A stretch of 63,829 nt of DNA, filler included, from Octopus bimaculoides (Eukaryota): assembly GCF_001194135.2 (NCBI RefSeq). It is 5 parts of 4 records of this genome, joined end to end, with 100 filler letters (N's around TTAATTAATTAA, not from the genome) between each part and the next. Parts side by side here need not be neighbours in the genome. Positions count along the whole stretch, not along the records: positions 44,466 to 54,414 come from NC_068993.1; 4 more parts are not named here. One strand, given 5' to 3'. Under the pieces are notes generated by a model that was not told the origin of the DNA, did not search any database, and was given only the letters and a program-made list of their open reading frames with translations. The stretch's first letter is position 1, and each line of letters starts with the position of its first letter. The position numbers and the translations under genes were made by a program. Shown piece after piece: positions 9,921 to 54,414 of this stretch.

Positions 9921-12372
9921 AATTTTGTATTGGGAAAAAATGCTAAAAGCTTCTAAATGATATGTTTTCCAGCTACCCAAAATTGTTTTATGCCAGTATA
10001 AGCAGCAAATAAGATTTTCCAAATCTCACCAAATTCCATGTGTACTTACTCAGATTTTCTATCAAATCTTCTGGATATAAAGACCTCTGTACACTATAGA
10101 GACTTTTATAAAAGTATCTCACTTAATATTTGAATAAGCTCACAGGCATTTTGCCAAGACAGGAATCAGATTATCTATAATAACTGAAAATGTTTCAGTT
10201 ATGAATTATTGATAAGCCATTTTACACTTAATAAGATCACAAAATTACCAGAAACAGAAAAAATTATCATAGTTCCAGCTTTTATGTTGTCTTTGGGGGT
10301 TTTGCAGTTAATATTGATTTCAGATTTTGACACAAGGACAGCAAGTCTATTACATTCATCCCAATACTCAAATGGTGCTTATTTTATCGACCCCAAAAGG
10401 ATGAAAGGCAAAGTCAGGCTTGGCAGAATCTGAACTCAGAATGTACAGATTGAGAAAATGCTTCTAAGCATTTTGCGCAGCATGCTAACAACTCTGCCAG
10501 CTTTGCCACATTAGTTTTTGCTGTAAATATTTGTGAACAAAAAGCTGGCAGAATCATTAGCATGTCAAGCAGAATGCTTAGCAGCATTTCATCTGTCTTT
10601 TTGTTTTGAGTTCAAATTCTGTCAAGATTGGATTTGCCTTTTATCATTTCTGAGTCAATAAAATATGTCTAATTTTATCTATAACCATCTGTCACTCTCT
10701 TTTTGCACTCTTGCAAACCTACCCATCCACCATTCTTGATCTTTTGTCCCTATTCTCTATAATACCCACCTTCTTGACTTTGAAGCCATGTATATCCTGA
10801 CACTTTATCTCCACTATGTTTTTCCCTCCTTCTGGCTGGGGTAACCATGTATCACTTTTACAGCAAGACAATGATTCCTGTTCCTCTATCATATTTTAGT
10901 CTCTTGACACTTGGCCATAAATCCACCTTCAATACTAAATTCCCATTCAGGGGTCTTTTTTTTTTTGTGAGTTATTTAGTGACCTGACCTCACAAGTGTT
11001 GATGCCATAAAAAAAATTTTAAAAACACCCAGTACATTCTGTAAGGAATTGATGTTAGAAGGAGCTTTGAACTGTAGAAATCATGCCTAATAGACACCGG
11101 AGTTTGGCACAGTCATTGGACCACAGTCATACTGGGGCACCACATTGAAGGGTTTAAGGCAAATAAATTGACACCAGCAATAATATTTTACATCTGTTAC
11201 TTATTCTACCAGTTTCTTTTGCTAAACAGTTAAGTTTCTGTAACATTAACAGACCAATCCCAGTTGTCAACTGGTGGGAGTGAACAAATACATACATACA
11301 TACATACATACATACATACATACATACATACATACATAGGTGCAAGTGTGGGTGTGTGGTAAGAAGCTTGCTTCAAAAAAAAAACACTTCCAGGTTCAGT
11401 CTCACTGTATGACACTTTGGGCAAATGTCTTCTTCTATAGCCTAGGGTGGACCAAAGCCTTGTGAGTGGATTTGTTAGACAGAAAGTGAAAAAAGGCCAT
11501 TGTATATATGTGATGTGTGTGTTTATATATATGCTTGTATGTCTTTGTGTCTGTTTGTTCCCCACCACCACCTGACAACTGGTGTTGGTTTGTTTACATC
11601 CCCATAACTTAGCAGTTCAGCTAAGAAAGCTGATAGAACAAGTACTAGGCTTAAAAAAAATAAGTACTGAGGTGATTCATTCAGCTAAAAACTCTTTGAA
11701 GGCAGTGCCCCAGCATGGCTGCAGTCTAATGATTGAAAAAAGTAAAAGATATATTTTATATGCTAAATTCAGATGTATACTTGTTTATATTTAAGTATGT
11801 ATGTATGTACACACATTCATGTAAAGCAGACTTCCAAATAGTTTCTGTCTACCAAATTCACTCACAAATCATGAAGTTGACCCAGGGCAACAGTAGAAGA
11901 CAAGATGCTGCATAGTGGGACTGAACTCAAAACCACATACATGCTAAGCAAGCTTCTTAAACACAGCTATGCCTGTTTGATATTTCCTGTAAACATTTTC
12001 TCTTGTCCAAGGTAGTATTTTGTAAATGTTCCAAATTTTTGGGCTGTTGTTGTCTTCTAGTCTGTCTGTCATAGCTTCAACACTGAGAAAAGCTAATGAA
12101 TATGAAGAAAAGAACAACAAAAAAAAAAAAGAAAAAGAAAGCATAAATAAATGTTCTAAGTAGCAGCTGAAAACTGCAAATGTCTGTGTATGTTATGAAT
12201 GGTTGCTATGGCAATGCTTCCTGTGAGGCCAGTATAACGTGTAGCCTTGTTGCATATGTGTACGTTATTTGTATGCTATTTGTACAGTTTGTGTTCAGAA
12301 GTATTTATCAGATGAGAAACACTGTTACAAAATTAATGAGGAAGGCATCATTATGTCTAATTTCAAGAAGCT

Positions 12373-44465: not shown

Positions 44466-45595
44466 GGAAAATAACCATAGCGAGGGACGTTCCACAGTTG
44501 AATTAGAACAGTCACAAACAGTGAAAGAAGACATGCACCCAACACCAGAGCTGAAGACACCTCTGAAAGGGGGTGGCCCCGCCACGTCAAAACGGTAGAG
44601 GAGTAGGGGCCGAAACCGGACGTGGTTCCTCCTGATGATGTCTTGAGCTAACTGGATCCTATAAAGGAGCTGTTGTGGTAGCAGACCACGAAGCATGGTT
44701 GAAATTCCTCAGGTATATTTTTATATATAGAAAGATGACCAGTAGGGTGGACATTTAATATGCTAGAAATAGCTCACATGTTGTGTCTACTAAGACCTAG
44801 TAGTTCTCAAAAAAATTTAGCGAAATACCAAATATATATATACATACATACAACAATTGTTTCGCTAAAGCATCTTTATCTTGATGCAAGCATAATGCAG
44901 TTCTTGGGATTACGCAATGCATTATGCAATTGTCTCACTCATCAGGCAATATTTAAAACAAAGTGATATCATGGCTTGTTTAGGAATCTATTGATTCTCA
45001 TAACATTTAAAATCCATCCGTTTCTTTGTTTATTGGTATTTTATACCGCATTCAGTGTTTTAGTATTTGTTTAATAACTTGTAAACTATTTGAATTACGG
45101 ATTACCCAACAACGACTTGACTTCATCGATGCTTTCTGTGCTAGTATTGAATTATTTCACTGTCGGTTCTGCGTCCGTCTGTCTAGTCAACATGTGGCAT
45201 GCTACACGTTGATGTGCCATTATTCTTTATGAATCCTATTTAACCGACATATATATATGTGTAGTGTGAGTGTGTATGTGTGTGTATGTGTGTGTTTGTG
45301 TGTGTGTGTGTGTTTCTGTGCGTGCCCGTGCATTTGAGCGTATGTCTTCATGTATGTGTGTGTGACAATGTCCTTGTCTGCATTTACATTTACACCACTT
45401 AAAGACCGTTGTCTTTGTTTATGTTCCGTAATCTCGAGGTACGACAAACAGGCATCAGTGAAATAGTTGCTGGGATCATCGATGCAATGAAGTAAATCAC
45501 TGATGACAGTATCCCAGCATGGTCGCAGTTCAGCGAATGAAGCCAGTAAATGAATAAGAGAATGTAGGAGACAAAATTTGTTTTTATATACATTA

Positions 45596-45618
45596 CTAAC
45601 CATTATAAGCACTAACAT
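45596..45618 (-). CDS. Candidate next exon of the C2-DSL gene: either an 18-nt phase 1->1 microexon (45601-45618, DVSAYN) or a terminal exon ending DVSAYNG-stop
   Basis: Acceptor gcattctctttcag|ATGTTAGTGCTTATAATG is immediately followed by GTTAGT. That hexamer is both a good donor and, if read through, gives GGT TAG. AATAAA lies downstream on the minus strand at 45029-45034. Confidence 0.4.
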
Positions 45619-46017
45619 CTGAAAGAGAATGCATTGTTATGCAGCTTTGTGTGGAGATGGATTTTCGTGGCTTTCAGTTTTTCGTTCGACTGCTTATGAG
45701 TTATCGTATTATCTATATATTTATATATATTACTGTAGAGTATACAGAATACACAAAAACTTTCGCTTTTAGTAAATTCGGTAGCTCCTTGAAAGTATAA
45801 AATAACTTGCTAAAGACAGAACCTTTCTTTCTATTTTGGTTATCAATCATGTGCAAAAAATTTCGGACTTCGTAACTTATGATTTACAAGAGAGGAATGC
45901 ATTCAACCAAGCAATCAAACGGTATAAAAATAGGGAATGTTTTTTTGATAGATGTATATTTTAGACGGGTGGGGATGATGATGGTAGTTGTGCACAGAAA
46001 CTATGTATAATATTTAC

Positions 46018-46154
46018 CAGTATAGCATTTTTTGCGGCCGGTATTTTTGTCACATTTATAATGGCCCTTCTCAGAATTTGTTGGAATACAATATGTTTTA
46101 CAAGTGCTTCCATAATAGTTCTGATTGCAATACATTTTTAGCTGAAGAAACATA
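46018..46154 (-). CDS. Internal exon (137 nt, phase 2->1) encoding the last C2 strand plus a DSL (Delta/Serrate/LAG-2) domain
   Basis: Acceptor ttttttttttcag|T and donor ACTG|gtaaat. Translation MFLQLKMYCNQNYYGSTCKTYCIPTNSEKGHYKCDKNTGRKKCYT(G) has the DSL pattern C-x8-C-x3-C-x11-C-x8-C with YYG and GHY. Confidence 0.9.
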
Positions 46155-46899
46155 CTGAAAAAAAAAAAGAACATATATATATATGTGCACAGAATCAGGA
46201 GGTAAAAAAACAAGTATTAACTGCAATTTGATCACGCATATTTTTTTTACTCCATTCTACATCCATACAAAAATTTCTTAATTATCCTACATTTTTTTCA
46301 CTCGTCAAAAGCTAAATCAATAACGAACATCTAACACACAAGCATAAAGAATAAAAGTATAACAATATAAAAATAAATTCCTTTTATTTTCTCTTCTTTT
46401 CTTTAAACACTTAAGAAAGTGTCACTGCAATGTTTCGAACTCACCCACAATTCCCCTTGAATCAGATTTTTGTCACTTAAGTAGAATCATAGAAAACAAA
46501 AAAAACATAGTAAGTTGGCTCCATAATTTCAAGTGCTGCTTAGCTCCTTAATACCATTTTGACTCGCAAAGTGTTAAAGCTAAATTGTGTGTCAACATTC
46601 ACAGGTTGCCCAATTAACAATAAGCTCCAATAATGGTTAGAGAAAACCGGTGATATCTGAATCGCGTTCTATATCTTCACACACTTCCATTTTCGTTTTC
46701 TTTTTCAACATCACACTCTTTCACTCCTTGTATTCCTCAACCTCTTTCCCACTCGCACATGCTTTTATTTCTTCATTCCCTGCCAATCCTTTACAATTCA
46801 AACAACAAAAATCATCAATCGAAGTACACCGTAGTAACAAAATGTTTCTAAGTCAGCCTATCAAAATTACAAAATCTTTAAAATCTATTTTCTGTTATG

Positions 46900-48010
46900 T
46901 CACACAAATGATGGGTTGCCCTATTTGATCATGCATCATGCTTTGCGCACTGAGTCTACTCCCCAGTTAAGGTCAAGTTTTTCAATGTTTGCTCTCAAAC
47001 TTTTTATCCCTATTTCCAAGACTCCAATAATAATCGGATGTATCATGACCTTTATAACTTCTTCATTACCAGCACTTGAGAATTTCATACGTCTTGTCAG
47101 TATAACGCTCAACTTTCTCCTTTCTGTTACCTCTGGTCGCAAATGAGTATGCCATGTCGTTTACAATGCATAGTTTCTTCTTATCGACGACTACAATATC
47201 CGGTTTGTTGTGTCCTATTTTTCTTTCGGTTTGTATTGTAAAATCCCATAACAACTTCACTTCACTGTTTTCAAGAGACTGTCTGTCTATTTTCCACAAA
47301 GTGGTTATAGCTTCTTTTTTTGTGTATGCAAAAATTCCAGTATACTGTTGCAACAAACTCATCATGTTTATACTTTATATGTTTATTATGAGTTAACTGT
47401 AGACATTTCGATACAATGTGTATTATGATCTTATTGTGGTCATCACACACACCTCATTTAACTGTGCAATCTTGTTGCTCTATCATGCTCTTGGTCTAAT
47501 CTACCCTTAGATTCCTGTGCTGCAATGATCATTCCCTCAGTTTTCCTCTTCAGTTCCTTTTCTTTAGCTGTTCTTCTTATCCTATATCTCTTTTGCATTC
47601 TTGAGAGACGCTAAGGAAATATTTTTAGTTCAAAGTTTGATTTCCGCATTTCCACGTTTCCCATTTTCTCTTTATGTGTCCTACACATTCAGTAAACAGT
47701 TAATGCATTGTTAAGAAGAGTTTCTTCTCTTCTATGTAAATACGAACCTAGACTTGCTTGACACATTAGCACTCTTCTTTCTGTTTTACTCCAGTATAAA
47801 CGGTTTACATCTGACTAGGGACACATGCTTCTGTGCGATGTGAGCTGTTTTTTTCGTTTTTCTGTCGACCTCCTTTGGCTTATCCTTTCTCCAATTAATG
47901 ATTCCTACTTCATTGCTTATTAAGGATATTATCTTCACGTTTGATGTTTGGAGGGTTTTACCAGCATTCCAACTGAATTTTAGAATCTTCTTCACTTTGT
48001 AAATATTCTT
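46900..48010 (-). mobile_element. Degenerate R4/Dong-clade LINE (RT C-terminus plus REL endonuclease) inside the C2-DSL intron
   Basis: VKKILKFSWNAG...VGIINW...EVDRKTKK, then KLLWDFTIQTERKIGHNKPDIVVVDKKK (PD..D motif), then IHPIIIGVL. Confidence 0.8.
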
Positions 48011-48184
48011 TACTGAGAGTTTTCTTCATTTTTATGTTTTTGATCTTGCTACTTTCCGGTATTTTTTAATGTTATACATCAAAAGAAAGCAGCGAGCTGG
48101 CAGAATCGTTAGCACGCCGGGCAAAATGCTTAGCGGCATTTCGCCTGACTTTACGTTTTCAGTTCAAATTTCACCGAGGTGGAC

Positions 48185-49190
48185 AATTCGGACCACCTTC
48201 TTGGATCCAGAAGGCAATTTTGTGGTGCTAGATGTGAAGGATAGCTAATGAGGTACCTTCAAACTAGTAGCTGTTTGTACTCCGACAGGGCTGGGACAAC
48301 CCAATTTCTTCAGGTCTGAAGGATTTTTCCTATGAACGTCTCACACTTTAGTGCTTCGCTGTCTTGAAGCTGCATTGGGACATCCAAATTCTATTCAGAT
48401 AGAGCAATCTGTAGGCACGTTGAAAGGAATAGCACAGGTAGTCCACATGCTAAAATCGTCGATTACACAGAACGCAATTATGTGATCTGTACGGTTGGCC
48501 TAGATTCGAAATCAGAGATCCGGTTACGTGAAGCTGAATACATCGCTCCTGGCGCCCCAAGCTTACAGAAACTCGGTTAGTCATGTGGGCGTTTCCGGGT
48601 GCAATCGCAAACAACGTATAGCAGTTCACTTTGTAATAGGCAATTAGAGTAGAATCGATAAGGTTCGAACAGATCTATCCACGACAACCTCCAACTCGTG
48701 CGATACAGCATTGAGAAAGTGGGTAAGTAGGATGGTATGGGTGAGACTAATCAATTTAGATCATTCAAAAGCTTTCGATAAGGTCGATCACCAACACGTA
48801 GCTGTTCTCATGGCGGCTGGTTTTGGTTCCGTCCTCCACGGTCAGATTGCCGCAGTGTACATTGGAATCTGTCCTATTGTAAGAGTGAACGGCAACCCAT
48901 CCAGTAGGTTCTCACCCGTGTATGGGAATGCTAAAAGTTTTCAATCTTTTATTTCTCATGCAATTTTTGTTTTAGCTATTGCATTTTTAAGTATATATTT
49001 TTACTTATTCTATGTAATTATGTTAATTTTGTTTATTGTCTCTATATATAATTGCATAACATCTTTTACACTTTCCGTCCTTTGGTACCTAACTTCTATT
49101 GGTCTCATCTTACATGTTTGTTAGCCTTTCGTTCGTTTAATGTTCATTGTATTTTATTGCACGTTCCATGCCCTTGTGGCTAATCAAGAA
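48185..49190 (+). mobile_element. Degenerate, internally deleted L1/Tx1-clade LINE inside the C2-DSL intron
   Basis: FLDPEGNFVVLDV...FKLVAVCTP (APE remnant) and INLDHSKAFDKVDH...AGFG...VRVNG (RT), with the family 3' terminus cccttgtggctaat. Confidence 0.75.
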
Positions 49191-49573
49191 ACATACTTTT
49201 GTTATATTTTCCTTTTTGAATCTTTACATAATTTGCAGAGTCTCAGTGTGTGAAGTATTTGTTATATTCTTATTGATACACTCATGGCCAGTGTTATGTT
49301 ATATTAATAGACTCTTCATTAGCAGCATCAGCTTAGTTTACCTTGAAATGTTTCTTCACACGGAAAACTGAACCCACTTCTTACGTAAAACAACAAACCA
49401 GAGAGTTGAAAAATTAATTTTAAACTATGAACCATCTTCTTTTACATTTTCTTTGCTTTAGCTTGCAAACGTATAATGAGAGGATAGTTGCTTGAGCGCA
49501 AATGATGCTTTGGCTCAATTTTCAGTAAAAACCAATAGAAATCTTCATTTTGCGGTAATTGAGAGCATACGTA

Positions 49574-49980
49574 GGCGCAGAAGTGGCTGTGTGGTAAGTA
49601 GCTTGCTTACTAACCATATGATACTGGGTTCAGTCCTACTGCGTGGCACATTGGGCAAGTGTCTTCTACTATAGCCTCGGGCCGACCAAAGCTTTGTGAG
49701 TGGATTTGGTAGACGGAAACTGAAAGAAGCCCGTCGTATATATATATATGTATGTATATGTTTGTATGTCTGTGTTTGTCCCCCCAACATCGCTTGACAG
49801 CCGATGCTGGTGTGTTTACGTCCCCGTCACTTAGCGGTTCGGCAAGAGAGACCGATAGAATAAATACTAGGCTTCCAAAGAATAAGTCATGGCGTCGATT
49901 TGCTCGACTAAAAGTGGTGCTCCAGCAAGGCCGCAGTCAAATGACTGAAACACATAAAATAATAAAAGAATAAAAGAATA
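49574..49980 (+). mobile_element. tRNA-derived SINE, family A (best-preserved copy; antisense in the C2-DSL intron)
   Basis: A/B-box-like head (gtggctgtgtggtaag...gggttcagtcc), core TTGGGCAAGTGTCTTCT, internal (TA)/(TG) microsatellite and (TAAAAGAA)n tail. Confidence 0.85.
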
Positions 49981-50178
49981 CACACCAGATTTTGGAAACA
50001 AGATTGCCTCACAAAAGAAGCGTAATTTTAGATGAGGAATTTGGATGATTTTCAAACTCGGTTTCAGATTTTCAAGAATTAATATCAACTGGAAAATTAG
50101 GTTCCATTTTACGCATTTATAAGCAAAAACATAGCTCATTATAAAATCTTCTTGAAACATTATAAAAAAAGGACTCAC

Positions 50179-50333
50179 CTGCTTACTCTTCCTTTGAGGT
50201 TTATGGTTTTCCATGCCTGTTTCTCTCTTCCAAATAGTCTCTCTAATTGAATATAGGACGCCATATAATCTACTCTTTGGAAGACATCCACGTCATCATA
50301 ATCCCAAACCGCTATCTTCAAATTCAATCTTGA
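50179..50333 (-). CDS. Internal exon (155 nt, phase 0->2) encoding the C-terminal half of a Notch-ligand-type C2 (MNNL) domain
   Basis: Minus strand reads atttttcatttacag|TCAAGA...AGCAG|gtgagt. Translation SRLNLKIAVWDYDDVDVFQRVDYMASYIQLERLFGREKQAWKTINLKGRVS aligns by eye to Jagged RSYTLLVEAWD...WQTL. Its terminal AG joins the first T of exon 46018-46154 to give an in-frame AGT (Ser). Confidence 0.85.
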
Positions 50334-51828
50334 CTGTAAATGAAAAATATATAAATAAAAAGGTTACATATGCTATTCAGATGCAAACTTATTCAACGAT
50401 AAGCGTTTCTTAGTCTAGAAAATCTGAAAGTGATTTTCAACACCAAGGATAGCTAGAATTACGCATAGTTAGAAACAGCAAGAGTCCTAGATTATTTGAA
50501 AATATGATTCAAAGACATTGAATAATTTATCCACACAGTCATTGCATCATCTCCTTATTTCTCTGTATCTTAATGTCATACGCAACTATTTCCACATAAA
50601 TATTTGAAAATCTGCCTGCAAATCAACAAATCATTGGTCAGAATATAGAGTATTGCCATCATTTGCTGTTGGCATTAAAGATTAAAACAATTCTACTGCA
50701 GTAATTATTTGCAACTAAGTTGAATGGAGCTTTGATAACTCGAGACGTCTTGGCAAAATATACATCAAAGCATCGGTGATTACTGAACGAGAATCACTGC
50801 AGACTAACCTTACTTTTGAACTAGATTGGGATTATAACCTCTTGCCAGAATATAAGTGCCTTATAACCTAAGAAATGCGATTCCGACAATGCCCAGAACA
50901 CATTAATTTTGGTGTCTTTAGAACTATAATTGCTCTCTTAGTTATATTTATATATTTCATGCCAATGAAAATATTCTGCCTTTCAAAATATACAATATTT
51001 GCACACTCACGTACACGCACACAAATACACACAAGCAGATATACATGGGCATAATTTGGCACTCTGCGTTCTGAGACCTCTGTCAAGGTCTACTTTACAA
51101 CTTTACTTTTCATTATTCCGGGACCGATAAATAAAATAACAATCAAATTGGAGGTTGATTCTTATCTCTCTCTTACTCTCAGAATTAACTATGTTGGGCC
51201 GTGTAGTACACTCTCAACACCCTTCCTCTAGAAAGCTGAAACATATATTAGAAACTTCATAGATAAACTGAAACTGATATGCTAACAAAACAGTCCAATG
51301 ACGTCGGACCTTTTTGTTGTTCATCGCATTTAATGGGGACCAACGTTTCCATTTTGAGATATTTCGAATACTGTACATTCGAAATTCTTTTACAGATTTA
51401 AAGAGTAAACAAAGATTAAGTTGAAGTTTCCAAGTGTAACCCAACGGCTATGTCTCTTTTTCTCGCTTCTAGCTTGGCTGACTGTTGCTTTCTCACTTCA
51501 CAAATTACCTTTCAGCAGAAATAATGATGTTTTTTGATGCTGCTTGATCGGGCTACATTTATTGAGGATGACTTTGGCTACGACCTTTCCGGCATCAGGA
51601 ATGTTTTTATTGCAGCAAACAAATTTTTCTGCGTTATTTTAATACTTTATATGGAGACCATGTTAAAGTAAATAGTCTTAGTTCCACGCCTCCATTGTGT
51701 AGCAACGGTTTGCTCTTGTACAGAAGTACATACTCTTGGTTCCACATTTCGCAGACGTGACGTGGAAGAGTACTCGCGCTGAGGTTGCCAACGTCCATTA
51801 AAATATTTACTGGAATATTTTCTGGTCT

Positions 51829-51912
<84 letters not shown>

Positions 51913-52429
51913 TCATATAAATATATATACGTAAGTGTATTTGTATATGTTTGCATAAGTATACATATGTATGTATATGTATGTACATATATAGATAAAT
52001 ATAGATATAAATATATATTTACACATACAGATGCACACACACACATGATTGAAGGCACAAGGCCTAGTGGTCTACGGGTTTGAGTGTTGGACGCAAGGTC
52101 GAAGTTTAGATTTGCAAATCGGTTGGCACAAAGTGCTTCAAGTGTTTGGATTTGTGTGTCCCTGTGTTTAATTTAATTCTCTGACAGAAGATCGTGTTTT
52201 AATGACTGAAAAAAAGTGATAAAGAAAAAACAAAATCAAAACGTATAGTATCGTTGCTGTTAATTTTCCCAAAATCACGGTCTCCCCTCTCTCCTTCTTA
52301 GTAAATTATATTCCTTCCTAGCCTTGCATTAAAACCACTCATTGTTCAGTTGTATCACTGCTTTCAGTACCTTGCCTAATGTTTGTCAGAAGAGGCCTTT
52401 GTTCTTGTCATTAGATGGCTTCGTTAGTG

Positions 52430-52765
52430 CATATGCACTCAGCTGGTGCAGAGGCACTCAGTAATGGGAAACACCAGCTCTCAGCATGGCATTTGTCAAT
52501 CACTGATGTCAACGGTTGTGTCAGTTATTTTAGGCAGTAGATTGCACCTCGCAGAAAACCGATGCTGTGTTACTGATGTTACCCAAGTTATTGGCACTCC
52601 AGAAGTAATTATGGTCCTCACCAAGCTTGTTAACATCCTGGTATCATAGTTTCAGTTTACTGCCAATGTGTAATGTTCAACATCGGGGTCGATTTATCGA
52701 ATTGCTGGTATCAAGAAGAAATAGTATGTTGCAAGTGATAAAGGTTGTCTGGGCATTGTTTCATT
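52430..52765 (-). mobile_element. Possible Tc1-like transposase N-terminal remnant
   Basis: MPRQP... and TSGVP...VTSVTQHRF weakly resemble Tc1 RSGRPRVT..QDR; several stops. Confidence 0.3.
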
Positions 52766-53381
52766 CTTATATATATATATATATATATATNNNNNNNNNN
52801 NNNNNNNNNNNNNNNNNNNNNNNNNNNNNNNNNNNNNNNNNNNNNNNNNNNNNNNNNNNNNNNNNNNNNNNNNNNNNNNNNNNNNNNNNNNNNNNNNNNN
52901 NNNNNNNNNNNNNNNNNNNNNNNNNNNNNNNNNNNNNNNNNNNNNNNNNNNNNNNNNNNNNNNNNNNNNNNNNNNNNNNNNNNNNNNNNNNNNNNNNNNN
53001 NNNNNNNNNNNNNNNNNNNNNNNNNNNNNNNNNNNNNNNNNNNNNNNNNNNNNNNNNNNNNNNNNNNNNNNNNNNNNNNNNNNNNNNNNNNNNNNNNNNN
53101 NNNNNNNNNNNNNNNNNNNNNNNNNNNNNNNNNNNNNNNNNNNNNNNNNNNNNNNNNNNNNNNNNNNNNNNNNNNNNNNNNNNNNNNNNNNNNNNNNNNN
53201 NNNNNNNNNNNNNNNNNNNNNNNNNNNNNNNNNNNNNNNNNNNNNNNNNNNNNNNNNNNNNNNNNNNNNNNNNNNNNNNNNNNNNNNNNNNNNNNNNNNN
53301 NNNNNNNNNNNNNNNNNNNNNNNNNNNNNNNNNNNNNNNNNNNNNNNNNNNNNNNNTATACATACACACATATATATATAT

Positions 53382-53429
<48 letters not shown>

Positions 53430-54414
53430 ATACTCACATACAAACCCTGATTTCAATTGAGCCCATATGGTATAATAAATATAGTGAATGAAGGAGGATA
53501 GGTGCCAACATTTTGACGTGCCGTAGGTTTGCCATTTGGTTGGAATTTCTTTGTGTGTATGTATGTGGTACACCCCCCCCCCACATATATATATACACAC
53601 GCATACACATGAATATATATATATATCTGTGTGCGTGCTTAGAGTGCATTCATATAGTTGTTATGAATTAGTTAATAAATTACGGGCAATATTCCAAGGC
53701 GTGTGTGTGTGTATGTTTGTGTATGAGTGAGTGTGTGGAGTGTGGAGTGTGGAAGTAAGTTATTTGCTGGCGTCCTCATTCTTTTCCTTAATATTCAAAG
53801 TTCATAATGTCACAAATGGCATAAGATCTTAGTAAATTTACATTTATATAGATGGAACTGTCAGAAATGTGTAATGTATTATTTATCTTAGTCAGTCTTT
53901 TTGCAGAAACGTTAGAGCGTCGGGTAAATTCCCTGAGGTAACTGTTGAGATACATTACGTTCTGCGTTCAAATCACACCAACGTTTAAATTGCTTCATGC
54001 CTTAAAAGAATATAAAGGATTGGGGAAAAACGAGACGGTGGTAGTAATATCTCGTCTGCCATGCTACAAGTACTATCTGAACAAATCGAAGAACTAAAAC
54101 TACTAAAATGGAACAGCCTGCTCATGAAATTAACTTGCAAGTGGCTCAGCACTCCACAGACTTGTGTATCCTTAATGAGGTTCCCACGGACATTCAGCGT
54201 GACACAGAATGTGATAAGGCCGGTCCTTTGAATTACAAGTACTACTCATTTTGGCCAGTTGAGCGGACTGGAACAACGTGAAATAAAGTGTCTTGCTCAA
54301 GGGCACAACGCTCGTGAGCCGAATACCTCTAACCACTAAGTCACTCGCCTTCACAAGCGAAGAACATAGTAGGCGTAATCAATGAGACATACTGCAAGGC
54401 TCTTTTGTGCTTAA

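What the first reader, a model, noticed from the sequence alone, without database searches (positions are those of the whole stretch)
45596..50333. Atypical Notch-ligand-like gene: C2-DSL module with an altered receptor-binding face and no EGF exon on this scaffold
Seen: two exons splice in frame to give ...LKIAVWDYDD...WKTINLKGRVSSMFLQLKMYCNQNYYGSTCKTYCIPTNSEKGHYKCDKNTGRKKCYT. Known: canonical Delta/Jagged DSL domains read CNKFCRPRDDFFGH (human JAG1), and F199, R203 and F207 there are implicated in Notch binding. Here that stretch is CKTYCIPTNSEKGH (R201->I, R203->T, F207->K), with one extra residue before the fifth Cys. The C2 exon starts at the same phase-0 intron as the WP| junction of JAG1/DLL1 and carries VWDYDD, closer to the Ca2+-binding loop of classical C2 domains than Jagged AWDSS. 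I found no exon encoding GWxGxxC or EGF repeats between 46018 and the scaffold end at 44466. Inference: a divergent C2-DSL protein that may be a decoy, a non-Notch ligand or a lipid-binding protein rather than a Delta/Serrate orthologue.
Basis: partly seen in the sequence, partly recalled or inferred. Interest (0 to 1): 0.72.

Follow-up and report, generated by a model that had tools for sequence, protein, structure and literature searches.

The report
Octopus mucin-like protein with Notch-ligand head
The two exons are real and belong to an already annotated Octopus bimaculoides gene ("mucin-5AC-like") that joins a Delta/Jagged-type C2-DSL head and one EGF domain to a very long mucin-like stalk; the "missing" EGF exon simply lies about 1.6 kb beyond the end of the sequence piece.

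Summary
Minus-strand exons 50333-50179 and 46154-46018 have canonical AG/GT sites and splice in frame to the quoted peptide. The peptide matches Pfam DSL (E 4e-9) and the human Jagged-2 C2-DSL structure (E 8.5e-14).

They are internal exons of O. bimaculoides XP_014785705.1, "mucin-5AC-like". After ...KKCYT that model reads GWTGENC, then one calcium-binding-type EGF, about 1,100-1,700 Ser/Thr-rich residues and a conserved basic C-terminal region of about 350 aa. It has no transmembrane segment. Orthologues exist in O. vulgaris, O. sinensis and Argonauta hians.

In O. vulgaris the GWTGENC exon lies 3.2 kb downstream of the DSL exon, and the piece holds only 1.55 kb there. "No EGF exon" is therefore an edge artefact.

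The altered DSL face (Y/I/T/S/K at JAG1 199/201/203/205/207) and the extra residue between Cys4 and Cys5 are real. They are class features: 43 of 92 lophotrochozoan DSL domains in a published data set that already lists this gene also have 8 residues there.

So this is not a Delta/Serrate orthologue. It is a catalogued but unstudied, non-canonical DSL-family gene, probably secreted. Its function is inferred only. Interest is modest.

The parts
50179..50333 (-). Exon A: C-terminal part of the C2 (MNNL) domain, SRLNLKIAVWDYDD...NLKGRVS. It starts in phase 0 and ends with 2 bases of a Ser codon.
   Evidence: The C2 profile hits it at E 3.7e-7, HMM positions 120-173. It aligns to JAG2 residues 118-171. 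Orthologous exons are kept in L001, O. vulgaris L002 73479-73618 and Argonauta L003 7171-7325.
46018..46154 (-). Exon B: last C2 strand plus the DSL domain up to Cys5 (SMFLQLKMYCNQNYYGSTCKTYCIPTNSEKGHYKCDKNTGRKKCYT + G). Its last base starts the Gly codon of GWTGENC.
   Evidence: Pfam DSL E 4.3e-9. It is identical to residues 100-146 of XP_014785705.1. Against O. vulgaris there are 3 differences in 137 nt, all synonymous.
46155..50178 (-). Intron of 4,024 bp between exons A and B, filled with interspersed repeats.
   Evidence: It aligns at 86-94% to the O. vulgaris intron. Several segments recur many times in L002. It has no C2, DSL or EGF coding potential.
47070..47365 (-). Repeat-derived ORF inside the intron. 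The RefSeq model XP_014785705.1 uses it as its first coding exon (MMSLLQQYTG...EILKC) in place of exon A. This is probably an annotation artefact.
   Evidence: The first 98 aa of P0016 equal this ORF, with donor TG|GT at 47070/47069. The O. vulgaris and O. sinensis models use exon A instead. Pfam finds nothing in it.
44466..46017 (-). First 1,552 bp of the intron that precedes the GWTGENC/EGF exon. That exon lies beyond the edge of the piece.
   Evidence: No W.G..C motif occurs in any frame. The piece aligns to O. vulgaris L002 only up to 80305, whereas the EGF exon starts at L002 82879.
50334..54414 (-). Distal part of the very long intron upstream of exon A. It contains an assembly gap at 52798-53355.
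   Evidence: No C2 or MNNL exon was found. In O. vulgaris the preceding exon (MKSCGIGKY...KQRH) is about 63 kb upstream of exon A.

Best explanation
SHOWN
- The finding is two internal coding exons of the O. bimaculoides gene annotated as XP_014785705.1, "mucin-5AC-like".
- The gene is conserved in octopods: O. vulgaris, O. sinensis, Argonauta hians and one more octopus genome contig.
- The gene models, supplemented by exon A, give this order: the second half of a Notch-ligand C2 domain; one DSL domain; GWTGENC and a single calcium-binding-type EGF; about 1,100-1,700 residues of Ser/Thr-rich tandem repeats with many N-glycosylation sequons, encoded with the tail in one exon of about 6 kb; and a conserved basic, Tyr/Asn-rich C-terminal region of about 350 aa with four Cys.
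- There is no transmembrane segment.
- No signal peptide or first half of the C2 domain is present in any model. The 5' end is therefore probably unannotated.
- The DSL belongs to a widespread non-canonical class, with 8 residues between Cys4 and Cys5 and a variable Cys3-Cys4 loop. It does not belong to the Delta or Jagged orthologue groups.
- The DSL-EGF head and the C-terminal region are conserved, and the mucin stalk is not.

INFERRED
- The product is a secreted, heavily glycosylated extracellular protein that presents a C2-DSL-EGF head on a mucin stalk.
- It lacks the conserved Notch-binding face, the DOS-type EGF1-2 and a membrane anchor with an endocytic tail. It therefore cannot act as a canonical pulling ligand for Notch.
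- The head most likely serves as a binding module for a protein with EGF repeats, or for a membrane or matrix surface, within mucus or extracellular matrix.
For: Identity:
- HMMER over 1.84 billion representatives finds P0016 at 98% identity over exon B. P0016 is XP_014785705.1 of O. bimaculoides and continues GWTGENC + EGF + Ser/Thr-rich region.
- Orthologues P0171, P0172 and P0173 were found and read.

Gene structure in O. vulgaris L002:
- Exon 1 is 10001-10117, exon A 73479-73618, exon B 79568-79704, the EGF exon starts at 82879, and the last exon is 91500-97610.

Domains and composition:
- Pfam finds only DSL and EGF-type hits.
- No hydrophobic 19-mer exceeds a Kyte-Doolittle mean of 1.46. 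By contrast, clear transmembrane segments appear in the relatives P0023, P0003 and P0002.
- The central region is 36% Ser+Thr with 63 NxS/T sequons.

Constraint:
- Exon B against O. vulgaris has pN 0 and pS 0.127.
- Identity between O. bimaculoides and Argonauta is 81% for the DSL-EGF head, 63.5% for the tail and 38% for the stalk.
- The exon A/B phases and splice sites are kept in Argonauta.

Class membership:
- Canonical Delta/Jagged DSLs have 7 residues between Cys4 and Cys5 and an RPRDDxFGHY-type loop.
- 43 of 92 DSLs have 8 residues there, including this one.
- In a neighbour-joining tree it groups with the Argonauta orthologue, then with the octopus paralogue XP_014785782.
- It is listed in Supplementary Data 2 of PMC8166818.

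Face residues: the importance of F207 and D140 in JAG1 comes from PMC3888931.
Against: - All full-length sequences are computational gene models. No transcript was seen here.
- The N-terminus is unresolved. The models start at MKSCGIGKY with no signal peptide. No exon for the first half of the C2 domain was found within 10 kb upstream in O. vulgaris. Secretion is therefore assumed from the disulfide-rich DSL/EGF domains and the retained C2 Cys, not shown.
- Exon A evolves almost neutrally between O. bimaculoides and O. vulgaris (pN 0.073, pS 0.072, plus a 15-nt in-frame indel). The C2 part may therefore be degenerating.
- The structure prediction of the head failed (pLDDT 42.6).
- Nothing here measures binding or expression.
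Confidence: 0.78

Rival explanations
1. It is a working Notch ligand or modulator: a secreted or matrix-bound DSL protein that binds Notch despite the altered face. It would act as a soluble agonist, as reported for the secreted DSL-1 of C. elegans, or as a competitive or cis-type inhibitor (decoy).
For: The DSL exon is under strong purifying selection (pN 0). The six-Cys DSL scaffold, the YYG motif, GHY and GWTGENC are intact. The best structural relatives by sequence are Jagged-2, Serrate and Jagged-1. The EGF carries a C2-x4-T-C3 O-fucose-type motif (CHSSATC, read). Secreted DSL ligands exist in nematodes (own knowledge).
Against: Y/I/T/S/K replace F199/R201/R203/D205/F207, and JAG1 F207A reduces Notch-1 binding to background. 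There are no DOS-type EGF1-2 and only one EGF. Argonauta has deleted four codons (EKGH) from the very loop that carries the face. This argues that the loop is not a conserved receptor contact.
Confidence: 0.13
2. It is a decaying duplicate: a pseudogene or non-functional remnant of a Delta/Jagged-like gene, fused by gene prediction to a neighbouring mucin-like ORF.
For: Exon A shows pN about equal to pS and an indel. The first half of the C2 domain and the signal peptide are missing from all models. The O. bimaculoides model starts in a repeat-derived ORF. No transcript evidence was obtained.
Against: Open frames, phases and AG/GT sites of exons A, B and the EGF exon are kept from Octopus to Argonauta. 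All indels are in frame. Exon B has only synonymous changes. The same head-stalk-tail arrangement and the same stop (..NYWNRYVT/N) were predicted independently in four species.
Confidence: 0.06
3. One reading: a short C2-DSL protein with no EGF repeats at all.
For: No EGF exon occurs in the 1,552 bp that remain downstream in the piece.
Against: Exon B ends in a GT donor with one base of an open codon. The RefSeq model of the same locus and three orthologues continue GWTGENC + EGF. The orthologous exon lies 3.2 kb (O. vulgaris) or 13.4 kb (Argonauta) downstream, beyond the piece.
Confidence: 0.02

Closest known systems
Jagged/Serrate and Delta (canonical DSL Notch ligands; e.g. human JAG2 5mw5, JAG1 4cbz, Drosophila Serrate 7alt)
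   Same: It has the C2(MNNL)-DSL-EGF order and the six-Cys DSL with YYG, GHY and GWxGxxC. It keeps the Asp that corresponds to the Ca2+ ligand D140 of JAG1. It has a phase-0 intron at the position aligned to the JAG1 WP|RS junction; the JAG1 exon boundary is from my own knowledge and was not checked here. The best PDB hit is JAG2 at E 8.5e-14.
   Different: The face residues are Y/I/T/S/K instead of F/R/R/D/F. There are 8 rather than 7 residues between Cys4 and Cys5. It has a single cbEGF-like domain in place of DOS EGF1-2 and 6-16 EGF repeats. It has no VWC domain, transmembrane segment or cytoplasmic tail, and it carries a mucin-like stalk of over 1,000 aa. Canonical Delta, Delta2 and Jagged are separate genes in the same genome.
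Non-canonical DSL-family genes of lophotrochozoans and cnidarians (PMC8166818 Fig. S1 and Suppl. Data 2; PMC2770060): e.g. O. bimaculoides XP_014785782, scallop XP_021376117, Biomphalaria LOC106065087, Nematostella "delta-like protein D"
   Same: It shares the 8-residue Cys4-Cys5 loop of the D..TG.K.C type, the variable Cys3-Cys4 loop without RPRDD.F, and the C2 domain in front of the DSL. Biomphalaria LOC106065087 also combines DSL and EGF modules with long Ser/Thr-rich regions. This very DSL is in the published data set.
   Different: It has one DSL instead of 3-17 tandem DSLs. It has no transmembrane segment, whereas P0023, P0003 and P0002 have one. Its C-terminal domain of about 350 aa was found only in octopods.
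Gel-forming mucins (MUC5AC), the name given by the annotation pipeline
   Same: It has a very long Ser/Thr-rich tandem-repeat region encoded in one large exon, with cysteine-containing ends.
   Different: Pfam finds no VWD, C8, TIL or cystine-knot domains. The name reflects composition only.
Secreted DSL proteins of C. elegans (DSL-1 and relatives)
   Same: They are DSL-containing proteins without a membrane anchor (own knowledge, not tested here).
   Different: The nematode proteins are small, lack a recognisable C2 domain and have no mucin stalk. No homology beyond the DSL fold was examined.

Membership tests
Canonical DSL Notch ligands (Delta/Serrate/Jagged) | DSL domain: six Cys, YYG motif, GWxGxxC end | tested here: met
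   Pfam DSL scores 36.9 bits on the two exons and 47.9 bits, E 1.6e-12, on the full model including GWTGENC.
Canonical DSL Notch ligands (Delta/Serrate/Jagged) | Complete N-terminal C2/MNNL domain behind a signal peptide | tested here: inconclusive
   C2 profile positions 78-173 are covered by O. vulgaris exon 1 and by exon A. Positions 1-77 and a signal peptide are absent from all models and from the 10 kb upstream.
Canonical DSL Notch ligands (Delta/Serrate/Jagged) | Conserved receptor-binding face (JAG1 F199, R201, R203, D205, F207; RPRDDxFGHY loop) | tested here: not met
   The loop reads YCIPTNSEKGHY, giving Y, I, T, S and K at those positions. Every canonical Delta/Jagged in the 92-domain set keeps the [RK]x[RH][DN][DN]..GH pattern.
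Canonical DSL Notch ligands (Delta/Serrate/Jagged) | Tandem EGF repeats after the DSL, starting with the atypical EGF1-2 (DOS) | tested here: not met
   Only one EGF follows (NQDDC...C-x-D-x4-Y-x-C, cbEGF-like), and then the Ser/Thr-rich region begins.
Canonical DSL Notch ligands (Delta/Serrate/Jagged) | Single-pass transmembrane segment and cytoplasmic tail | tested here: not met
   The best 19-residue hydropathy window is 0.93-1.46 in the four octopod proteins, against 2.7-3.6 in relatives that have a transmembrane segment. This holds for gene models only.
Non-canonical DSL-family proteins (lophotrochozoan/cnidarian group) | DSL with 8 residues between Cys4 and Cys5 and a non-RPRDD loop, outside the Delta and Jagged orthologue groups | tested here: met
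   Cys spacing is 8-3-11-8-8. 43 of 92 domains share the 8-residue loop. In the neighbour-joining tree it sits in the clade of non-canonical DSLs. The sequence is in Suppl. Data 2 of PMC8166818. The domain is short, so the tree is weakly resolved.
Gel-forming mucins (MUC5AC-like) | VWD-C8-TIL assemblies and a C-terminal cystine knot flanking the Ser/Thr-rich repeats | tested here: not met
   Pfam finds none of these domains on P0016, nor on its C-terminal 349 aa. Only the Ser/Thr-rich repeat region is mucin-like.
Ca2+-dependent lipid-binding C2 domains of Notch ligands | Acidic Ca2+ ligands in the beta1-2 and beta5-6 loops (JAG1 D72, D140) | tested here: inconclusive
   The D140 equivalent is present (WDYDD; VLDVDN in Argonauta). 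The beta1-2 loop lies in the unannotated N-terminal half. Lipid binding cannot be tested with these tools.

The most novel reading that the evidence does not exclude
Octopods have turned a Notch-ligand head (C2-DSL-EGF) into the tip of a secreted mucin. This would create an extracellular, matrix- or mucus-borne protein that either tunes Notch signalling at a distance or binds a different partner, whether lipid or EGF-repeat protein. It would be a functionally new use of the DSL module that is conserved across Octopoda.
Probability: 0.2. Interest if true: 0.55.

Novelty: new member of a known kind. Interest (0 to 1): 0.3.

Why it matters
Non-canonical DSL proteins are numerous in molluscs, annelids and cnidarians.

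This octopod gene is a clean example. One DSL domain is under strong purifying selection, yet it lacks the residues that canonical ligands use to bind Notch. It sits on a mucin stalk and has no membrane anchor. If expressed, it could show what a DSL module does outside classical Notch activation.

In practical terms, the work corrects an annotation. The O. bimaculoides RefSeq model starts in an intronic repeat and omits the C2 exon. The name "mucin-5AC-like" hides the DSL-family nature of the gene. All current models lack the 5' end.

Tried and rejected
1. The first word-index search with the 98-aa peptide found only one genomic exon ORF. It missed the RefSeq protein, which the exhaustive HMMER search then found.
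2. A third word-index search with an alignment of the heads returned only generic EGF hits. It gave no transcripts that extend the 5' end.
3. An exact look-up of P0016 in the contig index found nothing on record. The O. vulgaris and Argonauta loci were used instead.
4. I searched for the missing signal-peptide and first-half-of-C2 exon. I used a regex for CC..C..C, tblastn with four ligand N-termini, and a 59-sequence C2 HMM. The targets were the piece, the 10 kb upstream of O. vulgaris exon 1, and its 63-kb intron. Nothing was found.
5. AlphaFold2 on the head with a 13-row alignment gave pLDDT 42.6, so no fold search was run.
6. Pfam on the conserved C-terminal region and on the two intronic repeat ORFs gave no significant family.
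7. tRNA and Rfam scans of the piece gave nothing.
8. A literature search for the accession numbers found no hit in any main text. The gene appears only in a supplementary FASTA file.
9. The pseudogene reading was rejected as the main explanation because frames and splice sites are conserved as far as Argonauta.
10. The Delta2 identity was rejected because Delta2 (XP_014771450) is a different protein with a canonical loop.

Full report
1. OBSERVATION

On the minus strand of the piece there are two short exons.
- Exon A is 50333..50179 (155 nt). It is preceded by tttcatttacAG and followed by GTGAGT.
- Exon B is 46154..46018 (137 nt). It is preceded by a T-rich tract ending in cAG and followed by GTAAAT.

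Joined, they read SRLNLKIAVWDYDDVDVFQRVDYMASYIQLERLFGREKQAWKTINLKGRVS-S-MFLQLKMYCNQNYYGSTCKTYCIPTNSEKGHYKCDKNTGRKKCYT. The junction Ser codon is split AG|T. One further base (G) opens the next codon.

The similarity is well beyond chance.
- The peptide passes the Pfam DSL threshold (36.9 bits against 24.2; E 4.3e-9).
- Over residues 5-98 it aligns to the crystallised C2-DSL of human Jagged-2 (E 8.5e-14). Drosophila Serrate, Jagged-1, Delta and DLL1/4 follow.
- A profile built from the N-terminal regions of 59 ligand-like proteins hits exon A at E 3.7e-7. It hits nothing else in the piece except exon B.

Against JAG1/JAG2 CNKFCRPR(D/N)DFFGHY, the octopus loop is CKTYCIPTNSEKGHY. There is one extra residue between Cys4 and Cys5.

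2. WHAT THE LOCUS IS

An exhaustive HMMER search of 1.84 billion representative proteins returned one protein that is 98% identical over exon B (P0016, 1,611 aa). This is XP_014785705.1, "PREDICTED: mucin-5AC-like [Octopus bimaculoides]". The window piece is therefore O. bimaculoides genome.

After ...GRKKCYT the model reads GWTGENCHVNQDDCMNNRCHSSATCIDGVAYYTCLCPPERTGTTCD. That is the end of the DSL plus one EGF domain with the C-x-D-x4-Y-x-C signature of calcium-binding EGFs. It then runs through more than 1,000 Ser/Thr-rich residues and a Cys-containing, basic, Tyr/Asn-rich C-terminal region that ends ...NYWNRYVT.

The first 98 residues of that model are not exon A. They are an ORF inside the A-B intron (window 47365..47070, minus strand), spliced from a TG|GT donor. 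That ORF lies in sequence that is ordinary intron in O. vulgaris. I read it as a prediction artefact.

3. ORTHOLOGUES AND GENE STRUCTURE

A search with the full protein found three orthologues: O. vulgaris (2,208 aa), O. sinensis (2,120 aa) and Argonauta hians (partial, 1,423 aa). All are named mucin-5AC(-like) by NCBI and "Delta-like protein" by UniRef.

The two Octopus models use exon A. They add one upstream exon, MKSCGIGKYVTNTIKSNNIDFQNIKDLQNPMKFRIKQRH. This exon aligns to the middle of the C2 domain of octopus Delta and to positions 78-120 of the C2 profile (E 1.6e-6).

In the O. vulgaris chromosome locus (L002, 107.6 kb) the exons are as follows:

| Exon | L002 coordinates |
|---|---|
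| Exon 1 | 10001-10117 |
| Exon A | 73479-73618 |
| Exon B | 79568-79704 |
| GWTGENC/EGF exon | starts at 82879 |
| Last exon (whole stalk and tail, 6.1 kb) | 91500-97610 |

The window piece aligns to L002 from about 65,577 to 80,305.
- It stops roughly 1.6 kb before the EGF exon would be reached.
- It starts about 55 kb downstream of exon 1.

This is the whole explanation for "no EGF exon on this scaffold". In Argonauta the same intron is 13.4 kb.

4. CONSERVATION

- Exon B differs from O. vulgaris at 3 of 137 bases, all synonymous (pN 0, pS 0.127).
- The surrounding introns are 86-94% identical.
- Exon A is much less constrained. It has 8 non-synonymous and 2 synonymous differences (pN 0.073, pS 0.072) plus a 15-nt in-frame indel.
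- Against a third octopus genome contig (L001), exon A gives dN/dS of about 0.55.
- Exon A nevertheless survives in Argonauta at the same length (155 nt), with the same phases and AG/GT sites, at 47% amino-acid identity. The counts are small, so these ratios are only indicative.
- Between O. bimaculoides and Argonauta the DSL-EGF head is 81% identical, the C-terminal region 63.5% and the stalk 38%. This is the usual pattern for a functional protein with a mucin-type spacer.
- Argonauta has a genomic four-codon deletion (EKGH) inside the Cys3-Cys4 loop of the DSL.

5. ARCHITECTURE AND WHAT IT IMPLIES

Pfam sees only DSL and EGF-type matches. It finds no VWD, C8, TIL or cystine knot, so the mucin-5AC name is compositional.

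The central region is 36% Ser+Thr with 63 N-x-S/T sequons.

None of the four octopod proteins has a hydrophobic stretch compatible with a transmembrane helix. The same test finds helices in the Biomphalaria, Nematostella and other relatives.

None of the models has a signal peptide or the first half of the C2 domain. The retained C2 cysteine (MKSC...) corresponds to the last of six C2 cysteines in Jagged and would lack a partner. I therefore infer that one or more 5' exons are unannotated. I could not find them within the 10 kb of upstream sequence that was available.

Canonical activation of Notch requires a membrane-anchored ligand whose endocytosis pulls on the receptor (established knowledge). 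It also requires the DSL face that includes F207, and JAG1 F207A reduces Notch-1 binding to background (PMC3888931).

This protein has Y/I/T/S/K at JAG1 positions 199/201/203/205/207. It has no DOS-type EGF1-2 and no anchor. It is therefore very unlikely to be a canonical ligand. My best reading is a secreted, heavily glycosylated extracellular protein whose conserved DSL-EGF head is a binding module. The nature of the partner is unknown.

6. COMPARISON WITH WHAT IS KNOWN

O. bimaculoides has separate canonical genes: Delta XP_014769856, Delta2 XP_014771450 and Jagged XP_014779348. All have RPRDD/RVRDD/RPRND...GH loops and 7 residues between Cys4 and Cys5.

[quoted passage not shown] Their Supplementary Data 2 contains this very domain twice, as Obi_XP_014785705.1 (with the artefactual upstream residues) and as Ovu_XP_029644311.1. 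The gene is not discussed in their text or anywhere else I could search.

I took 89 non-tandem DSL domains from that file, with the window's own peptide used for this gene's entry, and added three canonical references.
- 49 have the 7-residue Cys4-Cys5 spacing. These include every canonical Delta/Jagged domain, plus some non-canonical ones.
- 43 have 8 residues, typically D..TG.K.C, with a variable Cys3-Cys4 loop. The window's domain is one of these.

Its nearest neighbours are the Argonauta orthologue (78%), the octopus paralogue XP_014785782 and scallop XP_021376117 (55% each). Canonical octopus Delta and Jagged are only slightly further away (51%), so a 45-residue tree cannot be pressed hard.

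Gazave et al. (PMC2770060) had already noted 7 "Delta" copies in Lottia and odd multi-DSL genes in cnidarians. The top HMMER hits here are exactly such Nematostella and coral proteins, which score highly because they carry many DSL repeats.

Jagged-2 has AWDWDND. The first Asp is the conserved Ca2+ ligand D140.

7. VERDICT

The gene is not a Delta/Serrate orthologue, its face is altered, and it probably does not act as a classical ligand. However, the absence of EGF is an edge artefact, and the "atypical" features are class features of a known, catalogued group.

The gene is already annotated, under a misleading name, and already listed in a DSL data set. Two things are new here:
- recognition of the full C2-DSL-EGF-mucin-tail architecture without an anchor, and its conservation across Octopoda;
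- the correction of the O. bimaculoides model.

I rate it a new (uncharacterised) member of a known kind, with modest interest. All functional statements are inference. The failed structure prediction (pLDDT 42.6) and the unresolved 5' end are the main gaps.

Noticed in passing
window 47070-47365 (minus strand): The RefSeq model XP_014785705.1 begins in a repeat-derived ORF inside the A-B intron (MMSLLQQYTG...EILKC) and skips the genuine C2 exon A. The O. vulgaris and O. sinensis models use exon A. This is a likely mis-annotation of the O. bimaculoides gene.
   Followed up: yes
window 48648-49121 (plus strand): A 158-aa ORF in the intron carries a motif that looks reverse-transcriptase-like by eye (LINLDHSKAFDKVDH). 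It is probably a LINE fragment antisense to the gene. Pfam gave no hit at E<=1.
   Followed up: partly
window 49572-49969 and 54107-54309; L002 many sites: Short interspersed repeat copies of about 200 bp match 5 or more other places in the O. vulgaris locus at 70-93% identity. No tRNA or Rfam match was found.
   Followed up: partly
L002 73581 (O. vulgaris exon A) vs window 50217-50231: O. vulgaris and O. sinensis lack 15 nt (GREKQ) that O. bimaculoides has (the third octopus contig, L001, has the same exon length and reads DREKA there). It is an in-frame indel in a C2 loop, in an exon with pN about equal to pS.
   Followed up: yes
L003 10050-10062 (Argonauta hians DSL exon): A genomic four-codon deletion removes EKGH, including the Gly-His of the otherwise nearly invariant GHY motif, from the Cys3-Cys4 loop of the DSL domain.
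   Followed up: partly
L001 2177-2443 vs window 48873-49137: A 265-bp segment lies in the intron downstream of exon A in O. bimaculoides. In the third octopus contig it lies just upstream of exon A. This indicates a mobile element or a local rearrangement.
   Followed up: no
P0016 residues 1263-1611 (not in window); P0171, P0173 C-termini: The C-terminal region of about 350 aa is conserved and basic. It has four Cys and a Tyr/Asn-rich end (YYNSYRNYYNNY...NYWNRYVT). It has no Pfam family, and no homologue outside octopods was found in the searches run.
   Followed up: partly
window 52798-53355; 51832-51911; 45258-45324: There is an assembly gap of 558 N flanked by AT/GT microsatellites. There are also a perfect (CA)40 array and an imperfect (TG)33 array.
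   Followed up: no
PMC8166818 Suppl. Data 2 (O. bimaculoides / O. vulgaris entries): Octopus has further non-canonical DSL genes (XP_014781344, XP_014785782, XP_014787229). O. vulgaris has a cluster of about 8 near-identical copies of the XP_014781344 type (YCSQGYYGPNC...RFQCD), which suggests a recent tandem expansion.
   Followed up: no
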